Source: Ylistrum balloti | Taxonomy: Eukaryota | Length of the DNA: 64,000 nucleotides | NCBI RefSeq assembly: GCF_031769215.1 | Contig: NW_026782274.1 | Coordinates: 558,001-622,000 of the forward strand | Direction: 5' to 3' | Shown here: one piece after another, positions 3,301-51,100 of the stretch | Layout of the letters: the number at the start of each line of letters is the position of its first letter | Position numbering within the stretch: the stretch's first letter is position 1 | The notes under the pieces: model-generated | The model's input: the letters and a program-made list of their open reading frames with translations, nothing else | Database searches by the model: none | What the model was told of the DNA's origin: nothing | Made by a program: the position numbers and the translations under genes

Positions 3301-6300
3301 CACAAAACAACATGCAAGAGGCATGTCACATGTTACATATAATTTGTGGTTTACATCTTTGACTTTTCTTTTAAATACGTAATGTCTGTTCATCCTTAGA
3401 AACACAACAATGTAAACAAATTTTTCCTGTCATCGTCTTACCTTAGACCAAAAAGCAACCCTTGTCCCATCTCTTCTTTACCCTGTAAACACAGATATAG
3501 TGCTGGTTCTGAATCCAAAAAGTTTGAACAGTGTGGTCAATAAAAAAAACATTTTACATGAGCATTTTAAAGAAAAAATAGCTAAATTTGATTTTTGCTT
3601 GTTAAAATTGTTCTTAAAGCCCCATTCTTAATCATCTGTCAAGTGTTAAAAGTTCTCCTTTTCATCTATTTACCTAGATGAACTCAATAAAGAAATCCAG
3701 ACTTTATATATCAACCTTCCACAATGTTTTATCTTGCTTCCACACTCAAATGTTGTTTACAGTGTTGACTACTGTTAATATCATGTCCGATATAAGCATC
3801 ACTTTACTATCAAATACTAAATTGGATGTCATAACAAAGTTACATGTCACGATACTTCAGTCTGCTTACCAGATCAAATGTGCCATATTCCCTCCTCAGA
3901 AGGTGTGTAAGCAGTCCAGCCACAGACCTCTGGTCACCCCATGTCCAATTTGACTGTAAAGACCAGCTGGACAGAGGCAGATATATATATGGCAGAAGTC
4001 CTGCCAGGAAGGACAGGCCAATCCTCAACAAGACAGTAAACGTCAAAATCTGAAAAATTATCAAAGATAGCCTCCTGAAGGTGTTCCTGTTAAAAAGTTG
4101 TATATAAACATGGTGGCAATCATCCTGACAGCAGGCAAAATTCTGGTCAGAACTGAGACTTTGCTGAGGCTCTGAATACAAATTCTGCATTTGTAAGTGT
4201 AAATTCTGGTCACAATTGAGACTTTGCAGTGGCTCTGAACATAATTCCATGTAATCTATGTGATGACTGAAACATCCAATATCTAACCCGAATGTCTACA
4301 TACCAGGTGTATATCAGTAAGTGTGAAGAGAAAAATCTCCATGATTAGTATGCATCATCTTGGATGACAATGACAATAAAACAAAGTATTTTACCTGTTT
4401 TTTGTAAAGAATGTAAAGGACCCACACTGCCATACAAAACACATAGACGACCATGGTATGCTGGTTACACAGGGAAAGTGCGCATACAAAAGATCCCAAA
4501 AACGACATCTGAAATTAAGTACAAAAGATTACAGTGACTCCTGTCTTATCTGACATCTCAGTAATCCTAGAACCTGTCTAGTCAGGACTGTTAGTAGTTT
4601 GATATCACATCTAATCAAATCTTTTTGTAGTCTGATATCCTATCGACTCCCACCTCTTAACATACTGCATTCTGACAGTATTGCCTTTTCCTACTTTCAT
4701 ATGTCTTCTCAATTCTGGATGAAGATTTCTAATCTCAATTTTAAACAAAATATACTGACAACATTTTACAATACAGAAACAACACACTACCTTGATCTTC
4801 TTTTCGTTATCAGCATCCTCAAACTGCAGAGCGATGAACATGAGCAGGGCCACAAACATGTTGTTTAGGGCGAAGACTTCGGCTGTGATGGACCATGCCC
4901 ATGTCAGCTTGCACCATCCCCACATTCCCACTGCTAACACAGCTGCTGATGGGCGACTGGTCAACCTCCAAGCATGATTTTATCATTTTAGTATTTCAAC
5001 CTCATGACAGTATTTCAACCATCCTCCTCAAAATACCCTTTATTCATTAGCCATTTATTGTACAGTATGGATCATTGTATGAAATCAAAGGCCCTGTCTT
5101 TAATTATTTTTTGACAGAGTAAAATTTATATAATATAATTGGTAATGATATTGGCTTATTGTTTGATAATTACTATGGAAAAAATTCAAAATTTGCATCA
5201 AATACCCATATTCTGTTAAAAAAGCAGGAAATTTTCCCTGTTTCATATAATAATTGATGATTCCAAACCTGAAAATAATTGTACCTTAGAATGGTGAGTG
5301 CTAGAAACACAATGGCTACCCCTCCAAACATGGAGGTCTGTAGATTAACGCGCCATGCCACACTGCTGCCAGGTACCAGATGTATTGCCATCCAGGCAAG
5401 CAAGGTAAAGAGAGGGTAGCCAGGAGGATGGGCAACCTGTACAAGATGTATACCAAAATATGTTATATACTACTGGCCAGCAGGGTAAAGAGAGGGCAGC
5501 CAGATGGTTAAAACAATATATAAAATATGTCTAGCAGCATGATGCTCATCTGTGCCATAGGAGAAGGGGGGAAAAGAAGACACTATTGCAGGAATATTAA
5601 TATGAAAAGCCAATTTTGTTCCCAAAACTTATTTGTGGAGTTAGAATGGGACAATTTACATTAGGGAAATTTGCTTCCCAACATTTCCATTTGTGACACT
5701 GTTTTACCATTTGTGAGTTCTGCAGGCCATCAGCATCTAGATTATCAAGGGTCTACTTTACACCCAGAAGACTTAAAATATCAGCAATTATGATCAAAGA
5801 TCCTGACATTCTTAACTGAGATGCCATCAATGTCCCCCTTATAATCAGAGTTACAACTACAAGCGCTTGTATTGCTATAAGTATGATTTTTTCCTGTTTG
5901 CTTGCTTTGTTATTTTCTAAAGGTCTGACCACTGATTACACTCAGGAAATTTGCTTTACTAGCCTTCAGAGAAATTATTCCTTGTTAAGTTGATAAAATG
6001 GCTACATTTTTTACCAAGATGACAAATAAATATTCATTACTTGTTACAGCTTAAACTTTCATGAATCACATAAATTTACAAAATTTCAAATCGATGACAT
6101 GTATAAGAAAACTATAAAGACTGCTAGTTAAATTGTTGATTTATACCCATTTCGAACTACTATAATGAGCAACCAAATAACTGTTTTCACTGGCATGAGT
6201 GTAAGTGAAAAAATAAAAACACAAAACAATAATACAGAAATATAGAACTACAGTCACTTCTACTGTATATCGTAACATTTCTTTGATTGTAATTCCTAGT

Positions 6301-16974: not shown

Positions 16975-19900
16975 CTAATTCCCTTTACCAGACAACTGGC
17001 TACATAAGTTTTTCTTTATCTTTAATTTTGCTAAAGCAGCTAATTTCTTTTTCTCAATTTCCTCTGGTGTGCATTTAAAGGGACTACTCTCTGCACTTTG
17101 ACTGCTGGAGAAGCCTGGACTAGAATCTGACTGATGACGGGGCTTGGTTACCTCCCCTGACAAATGTTTTTTTCTTTCCAATGCTGCCAGTTTTTTTCGC
17201 TCTATTTCATCTGGTGTACATTTTCCAGGACTAACACTATTTCTATCACTTGAAACACCACCAGTTACGCATTTATTCTTTTCTTCCCTAAGTTTAAGTC
17301 TTTCCACAGCGGCCTGGCGCTTTCTTTCTATATCATCCTGCTGATACTTTACAGGGCTTCCAGTAGAGTTAACCTGTACTGCACTGGCACTTTCTGCGAC
17401 AATATTCTGTGGTTTTCTGATCACACAATCTTGTTTATATTTCTTGGTCACGCTTGAACTTTCAGATAAAGTTTCCTTACTTTTAATTCGTCTTTTTTCT
17501 AGGGCAGCTTGTTTTTTCCTTTCAATTTCTTCTTGCATATATTTTGTTGGACTTAATTTGATGGAATTTTCATTCACTAACATACTTTCTGGAGACACAG
17601 CTGTGACATTTTTCTTTTGTAGTTTGGCTTTTGCTGCATCCTTTTTCTGCTCAATTTCATTTATAGAGCATTTGCTAGTGAAAGCACTTGGACTTGTCTT
17701 TTGACACTGCTGACTTTGTGGTACTGGAGGCATCTGTGAAGCTTCCACTGGAAATAGGAAAGTGATTATAATTTATATTTTGCAAGATTTTGGTACAAAA
17801 TTGATATGCATTGATGAGAAGCAACCTCAACAACATCATTCATAGATTTAATGCATTTATTAAACTCTTGTGCTAAAACCATTAACCAACAGCTAAAGTG
17901 GTATCTGAATCATCAGTAAGGTTATGAAGGATATCCTGACCTGAAGTAGTTATCAACTTTGAACAGGTTATTTTTTCAGTTTTAGCAGCATGATATACAG
18001 CATATATTGAATTTATTCCCCTAGCGATTTTTCAAGATCAACTACTTGTTTCAAAACCTACAAAAATACAGCCAAGTCAGACTGAAATTTATTTATTTGT
18101 ATTTATCAGCAACATATGATAATCATATACACCAAAGACACCCTAGTTTATTACACTACAAGTGTATTTATATGCACCAAAATGAAACCCAGTCCTGGGT
18201 TTGAATTTTTTCAAATTTATACAAAGAGGATTTTACATTTAAAATATATCTATATTTCCTTGAGAGATTTATGCCACAATTTCAAGACTTTTTCATTTCA
18301 GAAATTTATATGAAAACTTTCTCATAATATATGTATCACTTACTCTCCACTGTGTCCAACATGGCCAAGATCTGCTGTTCAGACAGTTCGTCCTCATCAG
18401 AGGTAAATAGATCTTCACTGTTGTCTACCGGAGATGGACCTAAAGATACAGACACATCAATTATACACTTCATAAATTAATGCAGAGCCCATCATACACC
18501 AGTGTAAGATTAGATGGTTACGGGAACAATTTTGACTGTGTAAAGGTAATGACCGGTCAGTAATGGCTGGATTGATGACCCCTGACTCTATATCCATCTG
18601 TTTTATCTGTATGTCATAGTACTTGTGTAGTTGTTGCACTGATTTAAATAGTAGACTTGTTACCTGCTCCAATCAACTCATAGAAAAGAAGAAAAAAAAA
18701 CCCAGAACTTTCTCTATAATTTAAATAGTCAGAAAATCCTAAGCTAAGAGTTATTGTATTGCATTGACTTTTTACATCAACACTAGTGTTTGGATTTAGT
18801 TTATACTACAATGGAAAAGTATTTTACCTGATGACTTTGAAGCAACAGCAGTGACTTTGTTAGTCATGTGTGGACTGGTAGACCTGGGCTGATCTGAGGA
18901 CATTTTTGAAGTAAGAGTAGATGCTGATGTCACAACCATTCCACTGTTTGCAGATTTGGATTTAAATTTGAATTTACTCCTCTGTGTGGATGAGACTTGA
19001 CTTGAAGATATCACAGTGTTAGCACTACTTTGAACAAAGACTGGCTTACTGCCACAGCTGACACCAGACTGTTTCAAATGAGAAGACTTCTGATTAGCAC
19101 CTCCAGTTCCAATGACATTAGAACTTTGTGGCACAGTCTTTGATTCTATTGTCATACAGTCTTTCGAACACTCGGGTAACAATGCATCAGATTTGAGTCT
19201 ATCACAGTCCTTGGTTAACAATGTACTTGACTTTGGGCTATCACACGATTTTGCCACACAAACTCCCTGCAGTGGTGCTCCTGGCAGCACTTTCCCTTGG
19301 TGTGGCAAAGTGCCTATACTCAGAGATTTTTTATTATGTCCACTGTTTTTAGGTGTTGGACTAGCCTGGCTGTCTAAAAGCTCATCTGGTTCTGCCAGCT
19401 GGCACAGGAGATCATCAGACAAACTGGTGTCAAACATTCCACTGGAGCGACGTCTACAAGTTGAGGTCGTGGAAGTGATTGTAACAGCTGAGTCTGTGCA
19501 CTGTAATCCAGAGCTTTTATTGGATTCACTTTTACTAACAGCAGAGTTCTGATTAGAGACTCCAGTATTTTCATGATTATTCACAACACAGGAATTTGTA
19601 TTTTGAGATTTAGCAACAATATATGTTCTACTAGATATGTTGACTTGACACTTCAGATTTTGGCTTGTTGTATACACAGGAGCAGAATTCCCTTTCCCAG
19701 AGACTTTGTTTGGTCCTGAGCAGCATGCATCACCAAGTCCTGACTGAAGTGTGGAAACTCTGTTGGTAGTGGAAGAAGAATTGCTGCCACCAGTAACATG
19801 AAATCTCTTTGTAGTGGTTGAAGACACATGCTTCATAACTTTTAAACCACTACTTGAATCAACAGATGTTCTTGTGTCCACTTGAGGATCACCTTGAACT

Positions 19901-22900
19901 GGATATTGTTTTTTATCAGTTGCCAACATGTTTGTAGGTTTAGAAGCTTGATTGCAAGAAACGCTTTTACCCTGAGTGACTGTAATCCTGCTCATCAGAT
20001 TTGAAGTGGATACACTTGGAACAGATTGTGTTTTTGTCACATTGTCAGAGTTCCAAAGTGACAGACATTTACGACTCTTATTATGGCTCAGATCGTGGGC
20101 ATGTTTTGTTTGCATGAGATCAATGTCATTAAAACTCTTCACTTTCCGGAATGGTGACGGTGATTTCCCCTTACTCCCTTGTAGCATTTTGTTAGGAATC
20201 ACTCCTGCTCTTTGTTTTCTATTATCAATTGGGTTTCTGTGAAGCTCTTGACGGGAATCTAAGCACACCTTGCTTATCTTACACTGAGATTCCTCCGTTT
20301 CGCGAGACTTGCGTTTGTTGCCCCTTTTGTCTGATAGAGTCCCCTTTGTCTCTATGACCGGGTCCTGTGTAGCCTTCATCAGTAAAGAGTCATCTTGGAA
20401 CATTTCATCATCACTCCAATTCAGATCAGAATTGTGATCACCGTCCTCACTGTCAACTACTCTAGCATTCTGACAACCTGGGGAAGTGTTCCCCCTCTTA
20501 ACACCAGAAGCAGTGGCATCAGCATCCGCAAACAAGTCCTTTGATTGATCTAAACCTGAACTTGCATCCTTTTTAGTACACCTGTAAATAGAATCCATGG
20601 AATGTCATTTCATGTCAAAGACAAATTTTGAGAGCTATTTTTCAACATGGTCATCCTTACTTTGACTTTATGGTCCTGCATAAGTGCACATTGTCCCCAG
20701 GAGAAATATTTCTTTCCTTGACCCAACCAGGCAACATATTTGTTTATCTGAAGTCTTAGTTGTTTCATGTAAGGGATCCACAAGTTTAAATAGTCACCTG
20801 AGTTCTACAAAATCTGCTCTTTTTGTTGTAATACCTGTTGTAGAAATCATCTCAATGATGAAAATCAAGAAATGAAGATGTAGAGACAAAGATTTTCTAA
20901 AATAGCAACAGTGACCTTGAATCTAGAATCCTAAAATATGAACTAGTCCTGGATACAATGGTCTTTTATAAGTTTGTTATGTCTCCTCAAAATTCTTTAC
21001 AGAGTGAAGCTCCATGAGTGCTGCGAGGATAAGTGTTATGCTACCTATGACAACATTCATTGTAAGGAATATATACACCTCCCCAGAGGAAAATTCGAGA
21101 CTCTGGGTTCATGAAATTCAATTTTATTTCCCACCTTATAACTTTTTCATCTATAAAAAGTATTTAATTCTACCATACTGGTATGAGTTCTGAGAAAAAT
21201 GTTCTTAAAGTTTTAGTCTATTTGACCCCATTCTCAGGCTCTTGGGGGGATTGGGACCATATAATTCGTAATTGTGGTTGACCTTTGGCCATCAAATGTT
21301 TCTGCAAAATTTGATCAAAATTGGTTCAGGGCTTTGTGAAGGAATGTCTAAAATATCAAATGTTTACAGATGCATGACAAACTTCAAGTGACAATGGACA
21401 AAAGACAATTGCAGTATGTCACTTGACAAATAGGTGACCTAAAGACTTTTAACTGGCTAATGACCAGCTATGTAGACTTTGATTCATTACAGAATGTATG
21501 GACCAGTGAAAGCCTTTATTTCATTGATCTCTCCAAGTGTCCAGCAATAGAACTCATGCAATTTCAATAAGTCAATACATACAATTCTCCTAATCCTTCA
21601 GTAACACAGATACACACGTTCTTTTCGGTTAAACTTATTGACAGTTCTTAATTGTAATTAATTTGAAGGAAATTTTTACTGCCCCAATCAAGAAACAGAA
21701 ACTAAATTTATGCATTAAAAGAAGTCATCAAAGCTTATCAGCTTTAATGAAAAATGTATAAAACTATTTGCTTTAAAAGAAATTATACTGAAGTTTGAAA
21801 AAATGCTGATATCATACTTATCAATTTCAGTCTCTTCTGTTGATATGGTAGAATCCTCATCACCTGCACAACAAACATCAATTGATTAAACACAGCTTGT
21901 CATATACAATGTAAATATTATATATTTTACAATAATTAGTATTACTAATTTCTATTAATCACTGTCGCTGGACAAAATGGAAGCACTGGGGGGAAATCCA
22001 GTATGTGCTTGGGCAGGTAACCTTTAATTTCTCATATCCAGTAGGGAATAAAATCAAGCTAGCATTGAGATAGCATGTGTGTGTCACTCATACACCTAGT
22101 ATTACATATCACTAATTCTATGTAACATGCAAGCCTTATTCAAGATCTTCCATCATATCAACACAACAAACTATCAGCAGGATAGAAAAAGTGATAACTA
22201 AAGATTTAATGGACGAGTCTATTCACTTCTCACATTTCATTATTTGAAAACAGGAATTATCTTTCATGGAATAATCTATGTTAAAGAGAAGGAAATAAGA
22301 TTCTCTGTAGGGAAAATTCAATGGTAAGAAAAGAGAACAAAATAACCCAGTACCCTCAGGTATAAATTTAAAAGTATTACCATCACCCTTTGACTGGTCT
22401 TAAACAATCTCTGGTAGAAATTCTACATTTAGACTACATAGTCTACCATCCTTACTCAGGTAGTATGTACTCTGTATATATCTTGCTTACATCTTTCTAC
22501 AGCCAGCTTCAGTTTTTCCAACCATTCTGATGGTATCTTTGTATCCCGCCCAGTATTTGAATGGGATTTCTCCTTTTTCCTGAATCTGGAGATAAATATG
22601 GATACATCAAAGTTTTATCAATACTTCAGGTAAACTAACAAAGCCCTACATCTGTTGTAAACTAATCTAAGTATGAGAAATGTAATCATTGTATTTTCCT
22701 GCTCAGTCTCAATTTCAGTAATAAATGTGGTATGTACTTACATTACAGAACTGTCATACAAGTATATTAATTTAATCAATGCTGATTAATACAAGATGAT
22801 CTTCATAGAAAAACATGGAAAGTGCACTTCAGGTAATTAATCTACACAAAGTCCCATGTCAAATATCACTTGTTTAACCTTGATTAATTGTCCCATTAAA

Positions 22901-25900
22901 ATAGGGAAATTAAACATTTTATATATAATTAACATCCTGTTACTTTCTTGTTTTTTGGTGCAAAATCTTATATTTTAATATGAAGGTAAGCAAATCACTT
23001 CGTTTTGAACATGAACACTTGTGTATATATATATACTCAACAAAAAAAGGAAGGTTAACATGTTTCCTTGGCGAATACCTGTAAATGAGTGAAAACAAAA
23101 TGACGTTTGTGCAATATTAGAAATTGGTAATGTTTTACATTACAAAATCCAAGGGGGTTACCATAATCATTCAAGCGTGAAAGTCTGTATTAGCGAAAGA
23201 GCTGCACGAGGTTTTCTGCGACTTGTATCTTCACTTGAATTTCATAAACATTCAAACTGACAACTGTTCCTTAGATCCTTAGGACTTAGAAATCACCGAA
23301 TCTTGCTATCTATTAACTTTATCATTATGCCCCGGCTGTCACAAGTACAGAGAGAAAGGCTGTAGGCATGATCCAGGCTGGGGAGTCTCGCCGTCGAGTT
23401 GCACAGCATTTTGGTTGCAGTGTTAAGACGATTTGCCAGTTGGTAAGTCGTTTAAACCAAACTGGGTCAACATCCGCCAGGGATGACCGTCGTATACGAT
23501 TGATACACTTGCGCAATCGATTCATGTGTCTCCCCAAACAGTCCGCAACAGGTTGAGAGCCTACCAATTGAAAGCGCTGCGTCGCACTATGGACCCAATT
23601 TGTTGCAACATCACCGTAAAAATCGGCGTAACTGGACCCGTGTTCACCGTTGTTGGGCCTTACGACAATGGAACAATGTTCTGTTTTCAGATGAGTCCAG
23701 GTTTTGTCTGCAACACGGTGACGGAAGGCGCAGAGTGTGGAGGCGACGAGGGGAGCGTTTTGCGAACTGCTGCGTTGCAGAACGGGACCGCTCTAGCGGC
23801 GGAAGTGTAATGGTTTGGGGTGGTATTTGTGGGGGGACTCGTACCAGGCTTGTTGTGTTAAATGGCATCAATATCGGGATGAAATTTTAAGACCAGTGGT
23901 TCTGCCATTCTTAAGACACCATGGCGTTGGCATCATTTTTTTTAATAGGATAACGCCCCAGCGCACACCAGTCATGTCAGCAGAACTTTCTTGCAGCAGA
24001 ATAAGGTACAGGTGTTAGATTGGCCATCTAAATCACCTGATTTGTCACCGATTGAGCATGTCTGGGACTTTCTTGGGCGACGCGTGAGAGAACGTCAAAA
24101 TCAGCTGTCAAACTTGCAGGAGCTGGCCAATGCCTTCATCGCTGAATGGAACAACATCTCTCCTTGAATTATCTGCCGGTTTACGAGTTCCATGCGACGG
24201 CGCTGCAATGCTGTTTACTTCGCAAACAGTGGCCATACCCGTTACTAATGGTGTTACCTTTGAAATTGACCCCAACGTCCTTTACAGTCGAATAAAATCA
24301 ACTGAACGCAAAGCTTTATAATAAACCATGACTGCAGTTTTATCAGAATTGATCAATTACTTTATTCGTACATGATTGGTAAGGATTTATGAAGGGGTTA
24401 ATTAATTAATCACAGAATAAAGTAGTGTTACCTTTCTTTTTTTGTTTAGTATATATATATCAAACAGCTTCTTGTGTCTTCAATAAGAAAGCTGTCTTTA
24501 TCTATAAGATATTTTCACACATAACTTGCATAACAAATATGTTCCATGAACAAATCTACACATCTTTTCATACCCTCATCCTTAAACTCACTTTAATGAA
24601 AGAGTATCAAACTCTTGAAAGATAAGATAAAGACTTGAGCGATCCTTGTGCCAGCAGACACTGATCTGAAACACTTCTCATTGGAGAATCTGGTAAAAAG
24701 GCTATATTTTTAATGCATTAGCTGCAAACCAAACTGGATAACTCTGGAAACTTAAATCCAGAATGGGATGAAATGTAGATTTTTTTGACAACATTCAATT
24801 TCTCTTTTAACACCAATGGGAATATCCTTATTTCAGCAGATGTTTTGATCAAGTTGAATACTCTAGGTATCAACCTTACCGAACAAGCTTGCTAGAGTGT
24901 GCAGCGAGTGCCCTGTCACTGGATTTATCTTCTTTGCTTGCATGTGTAGGTCGGTTTGACGAATTCATCCACAATCCAAGAAGGGGTGGAGTGTTTGTGG
25001 ACGGAGCTGCATCCTCCTCCCGAGACTGAAAGTAACAAACTATAACTTTAACATGTTATATATAGATAGTCCTCATTTACTTACTCTGCATCCCCAACAT
25101 ATTTTGTTTACATGTCACAGCTGATTTGATATTCAAGGCCTTGTTTCCAGTATGGAGAGGTTTTACAGAGTTGATAATGTCTATACTACTATGTAAGTTG
25201 TGGTGATCACGTTACTAAAACTTGCAGGTAACCGAGTATGGGTCAGGGTTCATGACAGCCCTACCTATAATACAAGCATTTGAGTGAAGTTCCAATGATC
25301 TGGGTAGCAGTGGGTGAGATGTTATGCATCTTTTCCTCATTTGAGAAGTTGACATCACTTTGATTGATATAATTTTACATATCATCAATAAAGCAGACCC
25401 TTATCTCTCTAGAACACCTGATATCCTTGTATCTTTGCAAGGGTTTCCATTTAGTATGTCGTTTGATCATAATTTTCTTTGATCATAATTTTCTGTCATT
25501 AAATCAGTTTTGAGTTTGAATAATGATTTTGTTGAAATTTCAGTATTCTGTTGATGTTCTAATATACATGTTTATTCTCTGATAAAAACACAAACAAGGA
25601 TATTTACCTCCTCTGGTATAAGAAGCTGGACAATGCCTGCAACATCACTGGAATGATGGCGTTGTCTGTCTGTAAGAAACAATTTTTTTTACATTAAACC
25701 TTGAAATTACACTCAACTCTGCAATATCGTTTTTCTGTCAGTTACTCTTCTGTTAGCAGTCTTTATACAATAATACAGGTGTTGTTTAACCAAACAAAGT
25801 AACATGCTGCTCCTCTTACATATTTGAAAACAAAAGGGTAAGTACACACTGTGGGTAAGTATTTTTTAAATACTTGGCAGTTTTTTTAAAAGATCAAATA

Positions 25901-28900
25901 CGTGTAGAGGGAGGGGGGTGATTGTGACATTATAAGTGTTTTGATCTCTTGAAATTTGTCAAAAAGAGTTTTGGGTAGGCACAAAAATAGCTTTGGAAGC
26001 TACTCAAAGCCTGGGAACTAAACATGTTAGTTTGCCTAATCAGAGCCTTTAAACTCTGTATCTGAAACTTACTTTTCCTTATATATCTGAGTGCATCTGG
26101 TGATGTGCAATCCCATCTCACATCACACTGAGCATCATAACCTTGTGATGCCAACAGCAAGTCATCTTTAAATGGAGTGTTATCAAGTAAGTAAGAACTC
26201 TTTTTGGACTTCGGTGTTTCAAATCTTGCATCTGATTTCAAAGTGTCCTGTCCTGAAAATAGGAATGAAATTATGACACATGGTATGTTTTACAAACATA
26301 GAATTAAGGAAACCAATAACTCTTCATTCAAAACCATTAATTTATTAATTTATTTCAATATGAGAAGTAGTCCTAGTGACTTTATTTCATTGGGAGAAGT
26401 AGTCCTAGTGACTTTATTTCATTGGGAGAAGTAGTCCTAGTGACTTTATTTCATTGGGAGAAGTAGTCCTAGTGACTTTATTTCATTGGGAGAAGTAGTC
26501 CTAGTGACTTTATTTCATTGGGAGAAGTAGCCCAAATAACTTTAATTCATTATGAGAAAAACATTTTCTCATGTAATTAAAGTGTACCCTGAGAGGTCAG
26601 CTATGTTGACCTTGCAAAATAGTTTTTCACATAAAATACACTATGCCGAAAACGCGAATGCCATGGAATGTTCCGTTACTGAGAAATTGCGACTTTTCTG
26701 AAAAACACACCTTTGGCTGAGAGGCGTTGACCTCGTTTTTGGGCACCCAAACCTGTGACATCATAAGTTCAACGCTTTTGTTGATGCAGCCATATTGTCT
26801 TTACTGTGCTACATGTGATTGTGATCTATTTTGGGATTTTCCGTGGTAATTTCTTTGTTTATTTACGTGAAAGTACTTCACATCTTCGCAATATCTAAGG
26901 TAGTGAACGAGGGGTCGGTGAATTAGCACTTAAATCCGCTAAAATGGCTTCCTATCGAGGAGGGAAGCGGTGTGTATGGTTGTCCTAACACTAACACAGA
27001 TGGGGTGTCGATGCATGACGTCGATAAATAAAACTGATTGTTGATTAAATAAAAGTATATTTGTTAGGTTGATATTTTGTTATTAATTCTACAACTAAAC
27101 ATTTTAAATTGATAGGCTAGCCTATGACTTGGGCGGTCGTTGGAATATTATTCCTTTGTAATCGTGAATGCCTAATACACGGAGAAGGCCTAGTCATGAA
27201 TGGGTCATGGGAATTTTCATCCCGAGAATTTTCATACTACTACTATATAGTATAGAATAGAATTATTAGAATTTATAGAATAGGTTATGTGTGTATGTTG
27301 TTTGTATAAGGTTTACTTGGTTTTTAGATCTTCCAGCAGACGATGTTGTTTAGTTAGCCATTTTGCGATCGTAAAAATAACAATAAGATCACCAATCTTG
27401 ATTTGTAAACACAGTTCACAGTGTAGAGATGTCATCTAAACTCATAATCACACCTGTGCCAGGTTAGGTAATTAGCACCTCTGTGGCTGGAAAAAACAAC
27501 TGTGACATCTGTGAGGCGACACGCCTGTCGGCTAACAACAGACGCGTACCAGTGCTAGGGTAAAAACCAGTCAAATAATTGTATAAACTTCTAAAACATC
27601 AAATTTTTATTGTCAACACAGCGGAGGGTGTTATAATTGGTTGTTGACACCCTATCTATATATATCCATAGTGCTACGAAAATTCCCTGGAAAGAAAATT
27701 CCCCTCGGACGAAACTTCTTCGGTACGAAAATTCCCGACACCTCGTGAATGTATGCATAGTCTTGCACAAACGCGATTTCCCGACGTCAGAAATTGTTGA
27801 TCGAGACTTGAAGATAGTAAAATTAGTCCAAAACCAAACCTAATTTTATTTTGTTTCTTTGAAACGACGATTCACTGTTCGACTACTTTCACGACTACTT
27901 TTAAGACCCAGTGAAGTACGTGCCAATCTATGTTGCCCAAGCGATCGTCTCTTTTCGAAGGGTCATTTTCCTCTTCACTGGATACATCGTCATGTAATTC
28001 CAGTTCAAATCGGTAGGGCTGGATTCCGTCTTCAGAAATATCATCCACACCATAATCAAACTCCTCAAAACTCATGTTTAAATCGCTCTCAGTTGCGGTG
28101 TCGTTGTCACTGTCAGTTATGTTGACTGCCATTTCTGTTGAACTTATGACGTCACGAGTAGAAGAGCCTCGATTCCGCGGAAATGACGATTCGGCTGATT
28201 AGGTCTGGGCGGACAGGTGAAAATCGACAACTTTGAGCTTTAATAACTCGACACTGGGGCGACGGATTTTGACAGGGTTTTCGTTATTATTATTTTTACG
28301 GCATTCTGAACATTATATCTAAATATAAAATTACTCTCAGTGTACACTTTAAGTACATAAGTACCATTACATAGACTAAAGTTAAATGCTCTGTAGTCAA
28401 TACCATATTTTATTGCAAATAAAACCACTCCCCATGGATAAAACTGACCAAACATTGCTTCCAACAAAATGCATGCATATATGACTTGTAAATCATACAA
28501 ATTTCCGAGGACAAATTAGATGGGGAAAAAAAACAAAATAGTTTCAGATGCAACTGGTGATTTACTGGTGTCAAGACTTTTCATATTGCTACATGACTAT
28601 ATATTTTTTTCCTTGTTTTTTTTCTGATTTCACAAGACATTTTCACAACATTAGGTGATAAAAGTTCTGTCTTAATGCAACAATTTGCTTGGGAAGAAGA
28701 TATAGAGATTTTCAAGATAGTGACTTTGACAGCCATCTTTACTGCCCATACATCCAAACAGTAAGGAGAATTTGTGGACCAGCTACATGTCATTATTAGC
28801 ATTATATTTATTGATACAACTTTTCTATCAGGAGTAATGTGATTTTCAAAATTACAGGCATATTGTATGGTGGCCACTTAAAAACAGCTTAGGTCCAAAT

Positions 28901-30148
28901 CTCATCTAGGATGATAATGTGGACTATACACAATTCTTCAGAAGTTGAATTTAACTTTTGATTCAGTATTTTAAATGCAGATACATGTACTTCAGTTTAG
29001 GAGCACCTCACCAAGAGTTGAATCAACAGAGCCAAAGAAGAATGATCCATCAGACAAAGACTAATTTTACACTGACCTGCTACTATTAAGGTATTGAAAC
29101 TGGAGTATTACAATAGAGGGCCATGGTATTCTATCCACAGAGAGATATCTGATAATATTATGTATTTGATGTAGAATATGGAGATGGAGATACAAAACAT
29201 TACTATCTTGTTCTTGTTTTAGATGGCCAATATTACTTGAGCCACCTAACAAGGAAGCCCAAAAGATAACGCATGCCAAGCAAAAATTAATAATTAAGTG
29301 CACCAGCACTGTCTGTTGTTAAACTGAAGTGGGAAGTCCCAGAAGTGTTTTCTGCACATAGGTTCTGTTGCAAAATTCTGAGTAAAATGTATCTATACCG
29401 ATACTCCAAATTTTATAAGGTCTCAGAATGGGCATACTAGATTTTTAATGTTATTGTTAATTGACACCATACATTAGCCAAAATTCCCGAAGCTCAGCTG
29501 AGTCCTGGTGTTCCCTATTGAAGGATCTATTCCAGTTTAATAAATATTCTAGTCAAATCAATACGAATTGTATTGATAATTGCCAATCAACCGATACACA
29601 ACAGTAAAATGAATGCAGAACCACTGAGAACATAGCAACATACGTCATCAAGAATCCCCGATATTGCAATTTAGTTTAGTTTATTACCAGTGCAGGATCG
29701 TTACGATCTTCTATACCGGTCTCAGTGATACAATGATAATGTTTATAATTATTGTCATTTGAGACGTCAGATCCAGGAACTACAGAATTTCTGCTTTATA
29801 ATTATATACCAGTTCTTGATTTGCCCAGAGTTCATCTAATCTATTTTTGAAAGAGTTAACTGTTGGTGCCGATACAATTTAATTATTATTAGACAATTAG
29901 AATCATTTACAATAAATTCCAAGCTTTCGACAGACTTTTATCAATATCTTACTATTCTTCGAATTTATCTCAGGTGACTTCTTAGTTGGAGATTCCTGTA
30001 TATCGGCGAGTCGAACTTTGTGACGTTTGTGCAGGATTTTCTCTTTTTCGTGTTCAACATGATGTGTCTGTTTAGAACTGGTGCTTGCCCTAGTCTTACG
30101 GCGAATTGTTGGTGACGTCTCATTGCCACTGACAGACCTTTTCTTCAT
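16975..30148 (-). CDS. ETAA1: ETAA1-like ATR activator (about 1115 aa, 9 exons)
   Basis: Exons (minus): 30148-29953, 26252-26073, 25669-25608, 25025-24880, 22585-22491, 21863-21818, 20581-18828, 18439-18344, 17747-16975; phase-consistent, 3348 nt. N-terminal FETPK...DVRWDCTSP matches the ETAA1 AAD region (human YETPK...DIFWDQNSP). Also PLLGLWM, acidic-hydrophobic motifs (WSDDEMFQDDSLL, SLSDDLLCQL) and C-terminal CTPEEIEKKKLAAL-type RPA32-binding motifs. Exon 1 is the least certain. Confidence 0.85.
20865..21445. mobile_element. Decayed HINE/Helitron-type non-autonomous element in an ETAA1 intron
   Basis: GTGACCTTGA and TTTGACCCC internal motifs, and a terminal block ending GTCACTTGACAAATAGGTGACCTAAA that resembles the GGTGAGCTAAAA hairpin end seen at about 47110. 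Left boundary approximate. Confidence 0.5.
21960..22090 (-). mobile_element. Possible highly decayed tRNA-SINE fragment
   Basis: Plus strand reads GAAGCACTGGGGGGAAATCCAG..GGGCAGGTAACC..AGGGAATAAAATC, resembling the reverse complement of a SINE head and body. The B-box is heavily mutated. Confidence 0.25.
23036..24449 (+). mobile_element. Full-length decayed Tc1 (DD34E) transposon, antisense in an ETAA1 intron
   Basis: Imperfect TIRs CTCAACAAAAAAAGGAAGGTTAACA / reverse complement CTAAACAAAAAAAGAAAGGTAACA, embedded in (TA)n on both sides. Transposase pseudogene spans about 23327-24248 across frameshifts: MPRLS..GCSVKTI, VLFSDESRF, GGSVMVWG, DNAPAH-(34 aa)-E in WPSKSPDLSPIEHVWD. Confidence 0.93.
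23327..24248 (+). pseudogene. Tc1 transposase pseudogene
   Basis: Multiple frameshifts and deletions split the protein over ORF-track pieces 23368, 23526, 23600 and 23815. The catalytic D, D and E motifs are still readable. Confidence 0.9.
26350..26555. repeat. 32-bp minisatellite, about 6 copies
   Basis: Unit GAGAAGTAGTCCTAGTGACTTTATTTCATTGG, near-identical copies, in ETAA1 intron 1. Confidence 0.95.
26581..28348. mobile_element. Non-autonomous Kolobok-type DNA transposon (1768 bp) in ETAA1 intron 1
   Basis: TTAA at 26577-26580 and 28349-28352 (TSD). 15-bp TIR AGTGTACCCTGAGAG / reverse complement AGTGTACACTGAGAG. Frameshifted THAP start on plus at 26944 (MASYRGGKRC/VYGCPNTNTDGVSMH). Convergent acidic ORF start on minus at 28132 (GIQPYRFE...RLGNIDW). 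Confidence 0.82.
27203..27742. mobile_element. MULE-like MITE nested in the Kolobok element
   Basis: Imperfect TIRs GGTCATGGGAATTTTC / reverse complement GGTGTCGGGAATTTTC with repeated GAAAATTCC subterminal motifs. 9-bp flanking duplication TCATGAATG (27194-27202) / TCGTGAATG (27743-27751). Confidence 0.6.
29668..29880 (-). mobile_element. 3' fragment of a CR1/L2-type LINE
   Basis: Minus-strand translation IVSAPTVNSFKNRLDELWANQELVYNYKAEIL* matches the conserved ORF2 C-terminus. It is followed by a short 3' UTR and a TAAAC-repeat tail. Confidence 0.75.
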
Positions 30149-48148: not shown

Positions 48149-51100
48149 TTAATCTTCTTCAGAACTGCTAGATGAACCGAAGATTTCTTCCTCATCCTTC
48201 TTTCCTTGTACATTTTCAGCTTCACTTTCACTCTCACTGCCACTATGTTCACTGCCACTTCTGGATCTTGAGCCACTACGACTTCGACTTCGGCTGCGGC
48301 TCCTACTACGGCTAGAACTACGGCTTCGACTGCGGCTGGATGACCTACTCCTACTGCGACTGCTACCTCGTGACCTGTTACTGGCCTTGTCATCCTCTGC
48401 TCCGCTTGCATCCCCTGCCTCACTGCCACTGGGGAAATCTTCTAATCCTGAAAAAAACCATTGAAACACCATTGTCAAGGGTTTTTGTGAACAAACCATA
48501 AGAGAATACTAGGTAAATAAAGATAGGGAAATCACTGCCTGTTAAAATCTAAATCACTGTTGTCCTCAGAAAAAAGACAGGAACAATAGAGTTACAATTA
48601 TCACTTTAACAAGCTAACTGGATATATATCACCAGTTTTGTCTTGAAATTATCTAAACTTTGTCTTCATATTGCCTTTTATACATTTTTGTATTGATATT
48701 ATTATATATGTATATTTTTTGTGGAATTACTTTTCTAGGCAATGATTGTGAAATATAAAATTTCCAAGTACAATCTTTTCTGAATTCCAGGAAGAACACT
48801 TTCAAATTAAGCATTTTTACTCCTTTATAAAGGGTCCATTATGAGTCATTGAGGGGTTAAACTTACCTGAGTTCTGCATCTCTTCCTGTTGCTCTTCTTC
48901 CTCATCCTCCTGAGCCAACTCCAACATCATCATTCGTACATCCTACAAAATGAACATTATCTATAACATCCTGCCATAATAAATGGTGATTGACTGCTGT
49001 ATGTTCAAGGCCATGGATGTATAATGGACAAGTCCAATGCACTTTTTGCTCCTATGAAGTTTCATTTGAATACGGCAATTTGAATAAGACTGAGTATTGA
49101 TCAAAGCAATCATACAGAGACTGAAAAAATTTGTATGTTGCTAATACAACTTTATGGGACATGATGATAAGCATATAAATTTGAAACTGATACTGAGAGA
49201 CCCCTTTTCCCAAATAAACAATTAACCAGCCTAGATAAATTCTGAAGATAAAACGAACTCTTTGCTCATTGAAAGCTTTCACTGAAAGTCTGAATGTTCA
49301 AATTGAAGCAGATGTAAACCAGTTTTTGTACCTGAGCTCCAACTTCTCTCTCTGCCAGCTCCCTGTGTTTCACCACAAGCCTGGACTTGGCGACCTGGGT
49401 ACCAGCTGTCTTACGTCTCTTACTCAGTCTCACCCTGTACAAAAGTTACATATAAATATATACTGTTGTATGTAATGTAATGCTTTACCTTATAGTGGCA
49501 TGGAGTTTTAAGGCTGTATGCTACAAACTTACAAATTGATAAGATCTTAATTCTGGCCATTATGTTTCCAGTATGTTTGTATGCATGCCTGCTTATACTA
49601 CATATCTGTAGTAAACAGAGCTCACCTATTAATAAAATAAATGAATGATATTCTGGACCTAAGTGATTAAGGGATTTCTGGTTCGTTTCATCTATTATAA
49701 GTCTCTTATGAAGTAAACCTGCTGTGTTGCTGTAGCAACCTACACTCTAGGTTTCCATAGTCTGTGTACAAGGGAGTGAACCAGCAGACCAGATGAAGAG
49801 ATGGGAAGAATAACCTCTGATGAGAGGACACCAAAAAACAGGCATAACTTCAAATTTTAAAATTACCTGGTTTCCAGTTCATCATAGTATACACCATCCT
49901 CCCTGAATACGAAGAAGTAGGTTTCCTCATATCCCCGTGATAACTTGTTCTTGACATTCCAGTTGTACTGTCTGGCCAGCAGATAGTCATACCTGTAAAC
50001 AGCCATGAAAAAATCAGAATATCATACACATTTTAGAAGGTTGTCTATAATGTCCTGTAAATCCACACTATAGCAATCATTTCTAGGTCTACTCCTGAAC
50101 TAAATAGATCTGTAAAATACTCCTTTACTCCTACTGAAAAAAATAGGTAATAAAGATGACGACTGCCTGATGTGTAACAACCATAACTCTAGGATTTACC
50201 TACTGACTTATATTGATAATAAGAAGTCAACTTACTCTTCCTCAGGATTGTAATCAATACCCTCCTCTGCGTCTCGCTTGCGTTTTCCAAGGGTTTCCTC
50301 TGTCGGTAGGAAGTAAGCTACAAACTGTTCACCACTCTCATCTATGGCTCCTCTGTGAACAAACACACCATGGCATTTCAGTGAATCTAGCTCTTAAAAA
50401 TTGATACTGGAGCTGTTTCAATGAGAGTATAAAATCACAATGAATTTCTTTAGTAATTTAAAAATTTTGGATTTCACTTTTCAGACATCTGTGGCATATC
50501 ATTAATATAGGATTTTACAGTCTTTTCTGTAAATAAATAAGTAGAATTGTCTGATCCATTCTCCTCACTTCCATGTAATACAATTGTAATTACTTTAACC
50601 TGGTATATAACAGATGAAAACATCAGAACAACTATTACATTGTATTCAACATATCAATCAACAGAATGCTGAAGACAGTCAACCAGTGGTATCCTTAAAC
50701 TATGATCAACAATGCTGATAAAACCAAGAGCATCAGTGAAACTGATGAAGGCTCCCAAAACACTCTGACTTTGGTGCATAAAATATTGTCTTTGAATGGC
50801 CAACATGTACTGCAAGTTTTATCTTAATTATCCTGCTTAACTTATACGATAGACACAAATTATTAGCAAAGGGCAATAACTCTGCAATTAAGGGGTTGGG
50901 TCCAGATTTGGTACACTGCACATTGATTGCCACCTTGTGATTATGTTTCACCATCCTTGCTTACCTTGTTGGCAAAGTTATGGTCCATACACAAAAGGAC
51001 AGATTGACAGACTGACAAATTGGCCATATGCAATAGTTGCACCATACACTGTCACAATAACATGAAAAGCCAACATGGCATATCCAGAATTTCCAAATCG

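What the first reader, a model, noticed from the sequence alone, without database searches (positions are those of the whole stretch)
17015..17680. ETAA1 C-terminus has five RPA32-binding-type motifs, four gated by S-P-x-K CDK sites
The last exon encodes KCSINEIEQKKDAAKAKL, SPTK-YMQEEIERKKQAALEKRR, SPVK-YQQDDIERKRQAAVERLK, SPGK-CTPDEIERKKLAALERKK and SPFK-CTPEEIEKKKLAALAKLK. Established: human ETAA1 has one such C-terminal helix, of the SMARCAL1/TIPIN/UNG2 RPA32C-binding class. Seen here: five copies, and copies 2-5 each start with a full CDK consensus. Inference: a multivalent, phosphorylation-switchable RPA-filament clamp for ATR activation that I do not know to be described.
Basis: partly seen in the sequence, partly recalled or inferred. 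Interest (0 to 1): 0.7.

Follow-up and report, generated by a model that had tools for sequence, protein, structure and literature searches.

The report
Scallop ETAA1 with five RPA-binding helices
The last exon of a scallop gene that looks like the ATR-activator ETAA1 encodes five copies of the short helix that human ETAA1 uses once to bind RPA32, four of them preceded by a conserved CDK-type site; such arrays are common in invertebrate ETAA1 relatives, but I found no paper describing them.

Summary
A minus-strand terminal exon (16975-17747) encodes five units of one motif. Units 2-5 each begin with S-P-x-K, nine residues before the invariant Ile.

The gene has eight exons (about 16975-30148, minus strand) and is an unannotated ETAA1 orthologue in a scallop genome. 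It carries a W-D-x-x-S-P activation core, an RPA70N-type acidic motif, and C-terminal units that match the published human ETAA1 RPA2-WH motif. Related multi-unit proteins hit Pfam ETAA1 above threshold, and every matched stretch maps to the model's C-terminal end. AlphaFold2 predicts five isolated helices in a disordered chain.

The array is not specific to this scallop:
- Four scallop genera keep all five units and all four S-P-x-K sites, one to one.
- Oysters have 3-4 units, a mussel 4 and a weevil 6.
- Abalone and a unionid have 1.
- Some lineages show recent internal duplication.

Not tested here: RPA32C binding, multivalency and phospho-regulation. UNG2 gives a precedent, where upstream phosphorylation weakens RPA2-WH binding, and human ETAA1 S894-P is reported phosphorylated. 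No RNA data exist for this species.

Verdict: a real feature, a new variant of a known kind, of moderate interest.

The parts
16975..17747 (-). Terminal coding exon (exon 8) of the ETAA1-like gene, including the stop codon at 16975-16977
   Evidence: ORF list; acceptor read from the sequence; tblastn of scallop orthologues
17605..17682 (-). Unit 1: divergent helix motif, no S-P-x-K, Lys at the conserved Leu position
   Evidence: predicted helix 29-45 with pLDDT about 55
17476..17553 (-). Unit 2: S-P-T-K (17542-17553) followed by the helix motif
   Evidence: predicted helix 72-92, pLDDT about 85-88
17281..17358 (-). Unit 3: S-P-V-K (17347-17358) followed by the helix motif
   Evidence: predicted helix 137-159
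17155..17232 (-). Unit 4: S-P-G-K (17221-17232), then C-T-P and the helix motif
   Evidence: predicted helix 179-196, starting at the Pro of T-P
17008..17085 (-). Unit 5: S-P-F-K (17074-17085), then C-T-P and the helix motif; near-invariant in four scallop genera (24-residue unit identical in three, one change in Argopecten)
   Evidence: predicted helix 228-253, pLDDT about 85-91
18345..18446 (-). Exon 7: acidic D-L-F-x-S-D-E-D-E-L-S-E stretch conserved in all homologues (boundaries approximate)
   Evidence: tblastn; alignment A1
18817..20577 (-). Exon 6: large, low-complexity, disordered-looking exon (boundaries approximate)
19366..19434 (-). RPA70N-binding-type acidic motif (RBM1-like) inside exon 6
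   Evidence: its spacing fits human W600, D606, D607, L609 and A613 as listed in PMC10479964
22483..22587 (-). Exon 5: L-L-E-K-L-K-L-A-V-E-type segment, at the place of the coiled-coil element after the activation core
   Evidence: coiled-coil character inferred, not tested
24879..25022 (-). Exon 4, with the conserved L-L-G-L-W segment
25608..25670 (-). Exon 3
26053..26250 (-). Exon 2, carrying the ATR-activation-domain core
26095..26124 (-). D-V-R-W-D-C-T-S-P-D: Trp with S-P four residues later, the spacing of human W107 and S111
   Evidence: PMC6891097
29960..30148 (-). Exon 1 (start of the coding sequence, approximate)

Best explanation
This is the terminal exon of the scallop orthologue of ETAA1, the RPA-dependent activator of the ATR kinase. 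It encodes a disordered tail carrying five short amphipathic helices of the class that docks on the winged-helix domain of RPA32. Four are canonical and one is divergent. I infer that several helices of one ETAA1 molecule engage RPA32C domains of neighbouring RPA molecules on single-stranded DNA, so recruitment rises steeply with the length of the RPA-coated stretch (avidity). I also infer that the conserved S-P-x-K just upstream of units 2-5 is a proline-directed (CDK-type) phosphorylation site whose phosphate faces the acidic patch of RPA32C and lowers affinity, which would tie ETAA1 recruitment to cell-cycle stage. Shown here: the gene's identity, the motif class, the copy number, the conservation and the helix prediction. 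Inferred: binding, avidity and phospho-control.
For: Identity of the gene: every full-length homologue has the [VI]-x-W-D-x-x-S-P core, the acidic RBM1-like motif and the C-terminal units. [quoted passage not shown]

Class of the motif: the human ETAA1 RPA2-WH motif printed in Suppl. Fig. S1B of PMC8053108 aligns without gaps to the units. By hand count, 8-11 of 25 positions are identical, in the shared register I-E-x-K-[KR]-x-x-A-L-x-[KR]-[RL].

Pfam: phmmer hits of the window exon score above the ETAA1 (PF15350) threshold, with 3-4 stretches each, all mapping to the end of the profile (precomputed hits).

Structure: AlphaFold2 gives five isolated helices with disordered linkers and pTM 0.21.

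Constraint: all five units and all four S-P-x-K sites are kept one to one in four scallop genera while x varies. Of 93 units in 29 proteins, 56 have [ST]-P-x-[KR] at the same offset. Three amino-acid polymorphisms in another individual all fall in linkers.

Partner: the terminal exon of RPA2 in the same genome keeps an acidic I-D-E-D-H stretch.

Precedent: phosphorylation of UNG2 T60 and S64 upstream of its helix lowers RPA2-WH binding, and human ETAA1 S894-P is reported phosphorylated.
Against: No binding, phosphorylation or expression data exist for this species; the only public run that holds the stretch is genomic DNA. The window's exons and the full-length scallop orthologues give no direct Pfam ETAA1 hit. 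Profile and sequence searches of the PDB found no RPA32C-peptide, ETAA1 activation-domain or RPA70N-ETAA1 chain. No vertebrate ETAA1 sequence could be fetched for a full alignment. Unit 1 lacks the Leu of the class. The human motif has R-N-R-K where invertebrates have S-P-x-K, so that site is not universal. The T-P of units 4-5 may simply cap the helix.
Confidence: 0.6

Rival explanations
1. Only the last unit is the working RPA32C-binding motif, equivalent to the single human one. The upstream units serve another purpose, such as nuclear import (basic clusters), self-association of ETAA1, or binding of a different partner.
For: Unit 5 is the best conserved: its 24-residue unit is identical in three scallop genera and differs at one position in Argopecten. 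It also sits at the C-terminus as in human ETAA1. Units 2-3 have Y-x-Q where human has C-S-P. Human ETAA1 oligomerises by an unknown mechanism (PMC7994790).
Against: Units 2-4 keep every position shared by the class (I, K, K/R, A, L/V, K/R) and are predicted as confident isolated helices with no packing. In relatives, each repeated unit matches the same C-terminal segment of Pfam ETAA1.
Confidence: 0.2
2. The upstream S-P-x-K is conserved as part of the binding interface, or as a structural element, and is not a regulatory phosphorylation site; or it is used by a proline-directed kinase other than CDK.
For: The residues from S-P-x-K to the helix start form one conserved block, S-P-x-K-[CY]-[ST]-[PQ]-[ED]-[ED]. 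S/T-P-E-E is a classical helix N-cap arrangement (established knowledge), and the predicted helices begin at that Pro. The human motif lacks the upstream S-P.
Against: S, P and K are fixed while x varies freely, which is the signature of a kinase consensus. The Ser sits at -9 from the Ile, close to UNG2 S64 (-10) and SMARCAL1 S2 (-11), which are phosphorylated.
Confidence: 0.3
3. The array is a neutral by-product of duplication of a short linear motif in a disordered tail, without added function.
For: Copy number varies from 1 to 6 among relatives, and some lineages show near-identical, recently duplicated units.
Against: The scallop units are only about 48% identical to each other, yet 62-100% identical to their positional counterparts in other genera, so they are old and maintained. 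The linkers diverge and carry the observed polymorphisms.
Confidence: 0.07
4. The gene is not an ETAA1 orthologue but an unrelated disordered protein with convergent short motifs.
For: No direct Pfam ETAA1 hit. RefSeq calls the orthologues uncharacterized or linker-histone-polyprotein-like.
Against: Three separate ETAA1 hallmarks occur in the human order (activation core, RPA70N-type motif, RPA32C-type motif), with matching residue spacing. Relatives link to Pfam ETAA1.
Confidence: 0.05

Closest known systems
Human ETAA1 RBM2 (residues 885-926), the RPA32C-binding motif
   Same: Same K-C-[ST]-P-E-E-I-x-[RK]-K-[RK]-x-x-A-L core at the C-terminus of a protein that also has a Trp-centred ATR-activation core and an RPA70N-type motif. 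The S/T-P at the helix start corresponds to human S894-P.
   Different: Human has one copy and the scallop five. Invertebrate units add an upstream S-P-x-K where human has R-N-R-K. The position of human F106 is Arg in the scallop.
UNG2 N-terminal RPA2-WH-binding helix with T60/S64 cell-cycle phosphorylation
   Same: Same helix class, with phosphorylatable residues 10-14 residues upstream of the equivalent Ile. Phosphorylation lowers binding through repulsion from the acidic patch of RPA2 (PMC8053108).
   Different: A single motif in an enzyme. The regulation has been shown experimentally, whereas here it is only inferred.
SMARCAL1 and TIPIN RPA32C-binding motifs
   Same: Same register of basic and Ala-Leu positions (table); they recruit fork factors to RPA-coated ssDNA.
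   Different: One copy each, with no K-C-[ST]-P prefix and no upstream S-P-x-K.
Multi-motif RPA70N binders (BLM p1/p2, RMI1) described in PMC10479964
   Same: They share the idea that several short RPA-binding motifs, or oligomeric partners, bridge neighbouring RPA molecules.
   Different: They target RPA70N, not RPA32C, and the motifs are not a repeated array of one unit.

Membership tests
ETAA1 (ATR activator; Pfam PF15350) | ATR-activation core: essential Trp (human W107) with a CDK-type S-P four residues later (S111) | tested here: met
   W-D-C-T-S-P at 26095-26124 (minus), and [VI]-x-W-D-x-x-S-P in every full-length homologue. Human residue numbers from PMC6891097. The F106 position is Arg in the scallop and Phe in some oysters.
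ETAA1 (ATR activator; Pfam PF15350) | RBM1: acidic helix binding RPA70N (human W600, D606, D607, L609, L610, Y611, A613) | tested here: inconclusive
   The motif at 19366-19434 has aromatic, D-D, L and A at the spacing of W600, D606/D607, L609 and A613, so 5 of 7 listed positions fit. Only residue numbers were available, not the human sequence. The PDB search did not recover the 8JZV fusion chain.
ETAA1 (ATR activator; Pfam PF15350) | RBM2: C-terminal RPA32C-binding helix | tested here: met
   Gap-free match of all five units to the printed human motif (units).
ETAA1 (ATR activator; Pfam PF15350) | Score above the Pfam gathering threshold | tested here: inconclusive
   No hit for the window's exons or for full-length scallop orthologues, even at E<=10. 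P0004 (38.3 bits), P0005 (31.2) and P0015 (37.9), which the window exon finds by phmmer, exceed the cut-off of 27 through repeated matches to the profile's C-terminal end. The window's exons were searched one by one and were not joined.
ETAA1 (ATR activator; Pfam PF15350) | Binds RPA and stimulates ATR-ATRIP kinase | not testable with these tools
   Needs biochemistry.
RPA2 winged-helix (RPA32C)-binding helix class (UNG2, SMARCAL1, TIPIN, XPA, ETAA1) | Register I-x-x-[KN]-[KR]-x-x-A-L-x-[KR]-[RL] on one amphipathic helix | tested here: met
   Units 2-5 fit, with Val for Leu in unit 3. Unit 1 has Lys at the Leu position (class table). Across 93 units, I and A are invariant and the basic positions are near-invariant.
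RPA2 winged-helix (RPA32C)-binding helix class (UNG2, SMARCAL1, TIPIN, XPA, ETAA1) | Short helix embedded in a disordered region | tested here: met
   Five isolated helices, linkers with pLDDT below 50, pTM 0.21.
RPA2 winged-helix (RPA32C)-binding helix class (UNG2, SMARCAL1, TIPIN, XPA, ETAA1) | Sequence similarity to a peptide solved in complex with RPA32C | tested here: not met
   The unit profile and the whole exon, searched against PDB chains of 20 residues or more, gave no RPA32C-bound peptide at E<=10. The motifs are too short for significance, and some deposited peptides are under 20 residues.
RPA2 winged-helix (RPA32C)-binding helix class (UNG2, SMARCAL1, TIPIN, XPA, ETAA1) | Physical binding to RPA32C | not testable with these tools
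   No complex prediction or assay was available. The partner's terminal exon, with its acidic patch, is present in the genome.
CDK substrate site (S/T-P-x-K/R) | Full consensus present and conserved | tested here: met
   Four sites at a fixed offset; conserved in four scallop genera with x variable; 56 of 93 units across relatives.
CDK substrate site (S/T-P-x-K/R) | Phosphorylated in cells by a CDK | not testable with these tools
   No phosphoproteome was available. Only human S894, at the helix-start S-P, is reported.

The most novel reading that the evidence does not exclude
Ancestral animal ETAA1 carried an array of RPA32C-binding helices, each with its own proline-directed phospho-switch. 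Array valency sets the length of RPA-coated ssDNA needed to trigger ATR, and rising CDK activity releases ETAA1 from RPA. Vertebrates kept one unit and one S-P (S894), and lineages re-expand the array independently when selection favours a sharper threshold.
Probability: 0.22. Interest if true: 0.65.

Novelty: new variant of a known kind. Interest (0 to 1): 0.45.

Why it matters
ETAA1 has been studied almost only in human cells and Xenopus, where a single RPA32C motif and a single RPA70N motif recruit it to RPA-coated DNA. The invertebrate orthologues are unannotated or misnamed in RefSeq. They show that the RPA32C motif is a duplicable module with 1 to 6 copies and a conserved kinase-consensus prefix.

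That offers a natural series for testing two things: whether valency tunes recruitment to RPA filaments, and whether phosphorylation next to the helix controls RPA binding. The second question is also open for human S894. The motif signature (S-P-x-K-C-[ST]-P-E-E-I-E-x-K-[KR]) also gives a practical way to recognise ETAA1 in protostome genomes.

Tried and rejected
- Pfam on the window's exons and on full-length scallop, oyster and mussel homologues: no ETAA1 hit.
- PDB sequence and profile searches with the exon, the unit profile, the nine-protein profile, the activation-core exon and the RBM1-like segment: nothing relevant.
- ESM Atlas: no usable hit.
- Three word-index protein searches returned only molluscan relatives and no vertebrate ETAA1, so no full alignment to a vertebrate protein was possible.
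- The three 2016 ETAA1 papers I asked for (Bass, Feng, Lee) are not held.
- RNA evidence: the one run found is genomic DNA with introns covered and no joints.
- Tandem Repeats Finder: no DNA-level array, so recent slippage is rejected for the scallop.
- An SPKK-type DNA-binding reading of S-P-x-K is rejected because x is never basic here.
- A coiled-coil or folded-bundle reading is not supported by the model.
- RPA_C (PF08784) at the default threshold found nothing, because the domain is split by introns. At E<=10 the terminal exon was recovered.
- The window's exons were never joined into one protein; all searches were exon by exon or used database proteins.

Full report
**What is there.**
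The window has no N. On the minus strand an open frame runs from 17748 to 16975. A pyrimidine run and an AG at 17749-17748 mark a splice acceptor, so the exon starts at 17747 with two bases of a split codon.

Its 257 residues contain five units of one motif, at residues 23-48, 66-91, 131-156, 173-198 and 222-247. Aligned without gaps, they share K4, I10, E11, K13, A16 and A17. Units 2-5 begin with S-P-T-K, S-P-V-K, S-P-G-K and S-P-F-K. Unit 1 has no such site and carries Lys where the others have Leu or Val. Units 4 and 5 also have T-P directly before the acidic pair.

**Is it more than chance?**
- The core pattern occurs five times. Its mean in 200,000 shuffles of the same residues is 0.00026, and no shuffle held two.
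- Four S/T-P-x-K/R sites were reached in 29 of 20,000 shuffles. In the real sequence all four sit at the same offset.
- A profile of the unit finds only these five places in the 648.5 Mb genome.
- At DNA level the longest matches between units (units 2, 4 and 5) are 64-71% identical and TRF reports no array, so these are old copies.

**The gene.**
tblastn of scallop proteins places eight coding exons between about 30148 and 16975 on the minus strand. I searched them one by one and did not join them.

The closest proteins are RefSeq models from Pecten maximus, Argopecten irradians and Mizuhopecten yessoensis. They are 66-72% identical over the last exon (64-66% by tblastn, 70-72% by phmmer). 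They are annotated as uncharacterized or as 'micronuclear linker histone polyprotein-like'. The window therefore comes from another scallop.

An alignment of nine full-length relatives from bivalves, gastropods and insects shows one shared architecture:
- a [VI]-x-W-D-x-x-S-P core;
- an L-L-G-L-W segment;
- a helical K/E-rich segment;
- W-S-D-D-E-L-F-E-D-D-S-F;
- an acidic D-T-S-x-S-D-D-I-L-x-Q-L-A-E-P-D-E stretch;
- a second acidic stretch;
- then the motif units.

**Is it ETAA1?**
Four lines of evidence agree.
1. Human ETAA1 needs F106/W107 and has CDK sites at S95 and S111 (PMC6891097). The scallop has Trp with S-P exactly four residues later, and some oysters even have F-W.
2. The human RPA70N-binding motif uses W600, D606, D607, L609, L610, Y611 and A613 (PMC10479964). 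The scallop motif at 19366-19434 has an aromatic residue, D-D, L and A at the matching spacing.
3. Supplementary Figure S1B of PMC8053108 prints the human ETAA1 RPA2-WH motif beside those of UNG2, SMARCAL1, TIPIN and XPA. It reads K-C-S-P-E-E-I followed by the same basic/Ala-Leu register as the scallop units. By hand count, 8-11 of 25 positions are identical for each unit.
4. [quoted passage not shown]

Direct Pfam scans of the window's exons and of the full-length scallop proteins give nothing. However, three multi-unit proteins that the window exon finds by phmmer exceed the ETAA1 gathering score: P0004, P0005 and P0015. Each does so with three or four stretches, and every stretch maps to the last 35 or so positions of the 818-position model. 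So each repeated unit equals the single C-terminal motif of the vertebrate-based model.

**Structure.**
AlphaFold2, given a 12-row alignment, predicts five isolated helices: 29-45, 72-92, 137-159, 179-196 and 228-253. Linkers have pLDDT below 50 and pTM is 0.21. Helices 2-5 are confident and helix 1 is not.

Each S-P-x-K serine lies six residues before the helix start. In units 4 and 5 the helix starts at the Pro of T-P, which fits an N-cap role for that Thr (inference from general helix-capping rules).

**How widespread is it?**

| Group | Units found by the core pattern |
|---|---|
| Four scallop genera | 5 (the pattern misses unit 1 of Mizuhopecten, which the alignment shows) |
| Oysters | 3-4 |
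| Mytilus californianus | 4 |
| A weevil (Ceutorhynchus assimilis) | 6 |
| Several unnamed assemblies | 3-4 |
| Haliotis, Sinanodonta, one unnamed transcript | 1 |

Of 93 units in 29 non-redundant proteins, 56 have [ST]-P-x-[KR] at -9 to -6, and 43 have [ST]-P at -4/-3.

In scallops each unit is closest to its positional counterpart in another genus (62-100% identity) and only about 48% identical to its neighbours. All four S-P-x-K sites are kept while x changes. In P0011, P0005 and the weevil, units are most similar within one protein (up to 92%). Arrays have therefore expanded independently and recently in some lineages.

A second individual of the window's species differs at three residues of the exon, all in linkers.

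**Mechanism.**
Established: RPA32C-binding helices recruit UNG2, SMARCAL1, TIPIN and ETAA1 to RPA-coated ssDNA. Phosphorylation of UNG2 T60 and S64, upstream of its helix, weakens binding by repulsion from E223 and D260-D262 of RPA2. Human ETAA1 S894-P is reported phosphorylated but its role is untested (PMC8053108).

Shown here: the scallop S-P-x-K serine sits nine residues before the Ile that aligns with UNG2 I74, close to S64 (-10) and to SMARCAL1 S2 (-11). The scallop RPA2 terminal exon keeps an acidic I-D-E-D-H stretch.

Inferred: several helices of one tail engage neighbouring RPA molecules, giving avidity. Proline-directed phosphorylation lowers affinity unit by unit. I rate binding by units 2-5 as likely, and CDK control as possible.

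**Literature.**
Searches combining ETAA1 with invertebrate, Drosophila, mollusc, bivalve or insect terms returned no paper on a non-vertebrate ETAA1 or on repeated RPA32C motifs. The held library lacks many subscription papers, including the three 2016 ETAA1 papers I requested, so this absence is weak evidence.

**Limits.**
- There are no RNA reads for this species.
- No vertebrate ETAA1 sequence could be fetched.
- No complex prediction was available.
- Exon boundaries other than those of the last exon are approximate.

**Verdict.**
The feature is real and under constraint. The gene is an ETAA1 orthologue with a repeated RPA32C-type module and a conserved kinase-consensus prefix. The array is common in protostomes rather than special to this scallop, and it appears undescribed. 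Its proposed function is plausible but untested.

Noticed in passing
window 23526-23890 (+): Two overlapping ORFs inside the intron between exons 5 and 4 of the ETAA1-like gene. The ORF at 23600-23887 resembles a DDE-type (Tc1/mariner-like) transposase (weak DDE_3 hit, 19.8 bits); the other, at 23526-23807, has no Pfam hit. This is probably a decayed transposon insertion.
   Followed up: partly
window 3840-4964 (-): ORFs downstream of the ETAA1-like gene; the one at 4614-4964 matches Pfam TMEM260-like protein O-mannosyltransferase (34.5 bits). This is probably a neighbouring gene on the same strand.
   Followed up: partly
window 48149-48499 (-): An Arg/Ser-dipeptide-rich ORF with a weak RSRP hit (16.8 bits), possibly an exon of an SR-type protein.
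   Followed up: no
database proteins P0002, P0036, P0041, P0020, P0044: RefSeq and UniRef names for the bivalve and abalone orthologues are misleading: 'micronuclear linker histone polyprotein-like', 'muscle M-line assembly protein unc-89-like' and 'Phosphomannomutase'. One Crassostrea virginica model carries a PMM domain (PF03332), which suggests a gene-model fusion with a neighbouring gene.
   Followed up: no
proteins P0011, P0017, P0047: Short (412-541 aa) insect-type relatives keep the Trp core as V-x-W-D-[WY]-x-S-P-Q. P0011 and P0017 also keep the unit array (P0047's tail was not examined), and they end with an extra helix fused directly to the last unit. ETAA1-like genes therefore exist in beetles.
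   Followed up: partly
G000:C519:1462078-1462137 (+), locus L006: Terminal exon of the RPA2 (RPA32) gene of the same genome; it ends with a winged-helix C-terminus that includes an acidic I-D-E-D-H stretch.
   Followed up: partly
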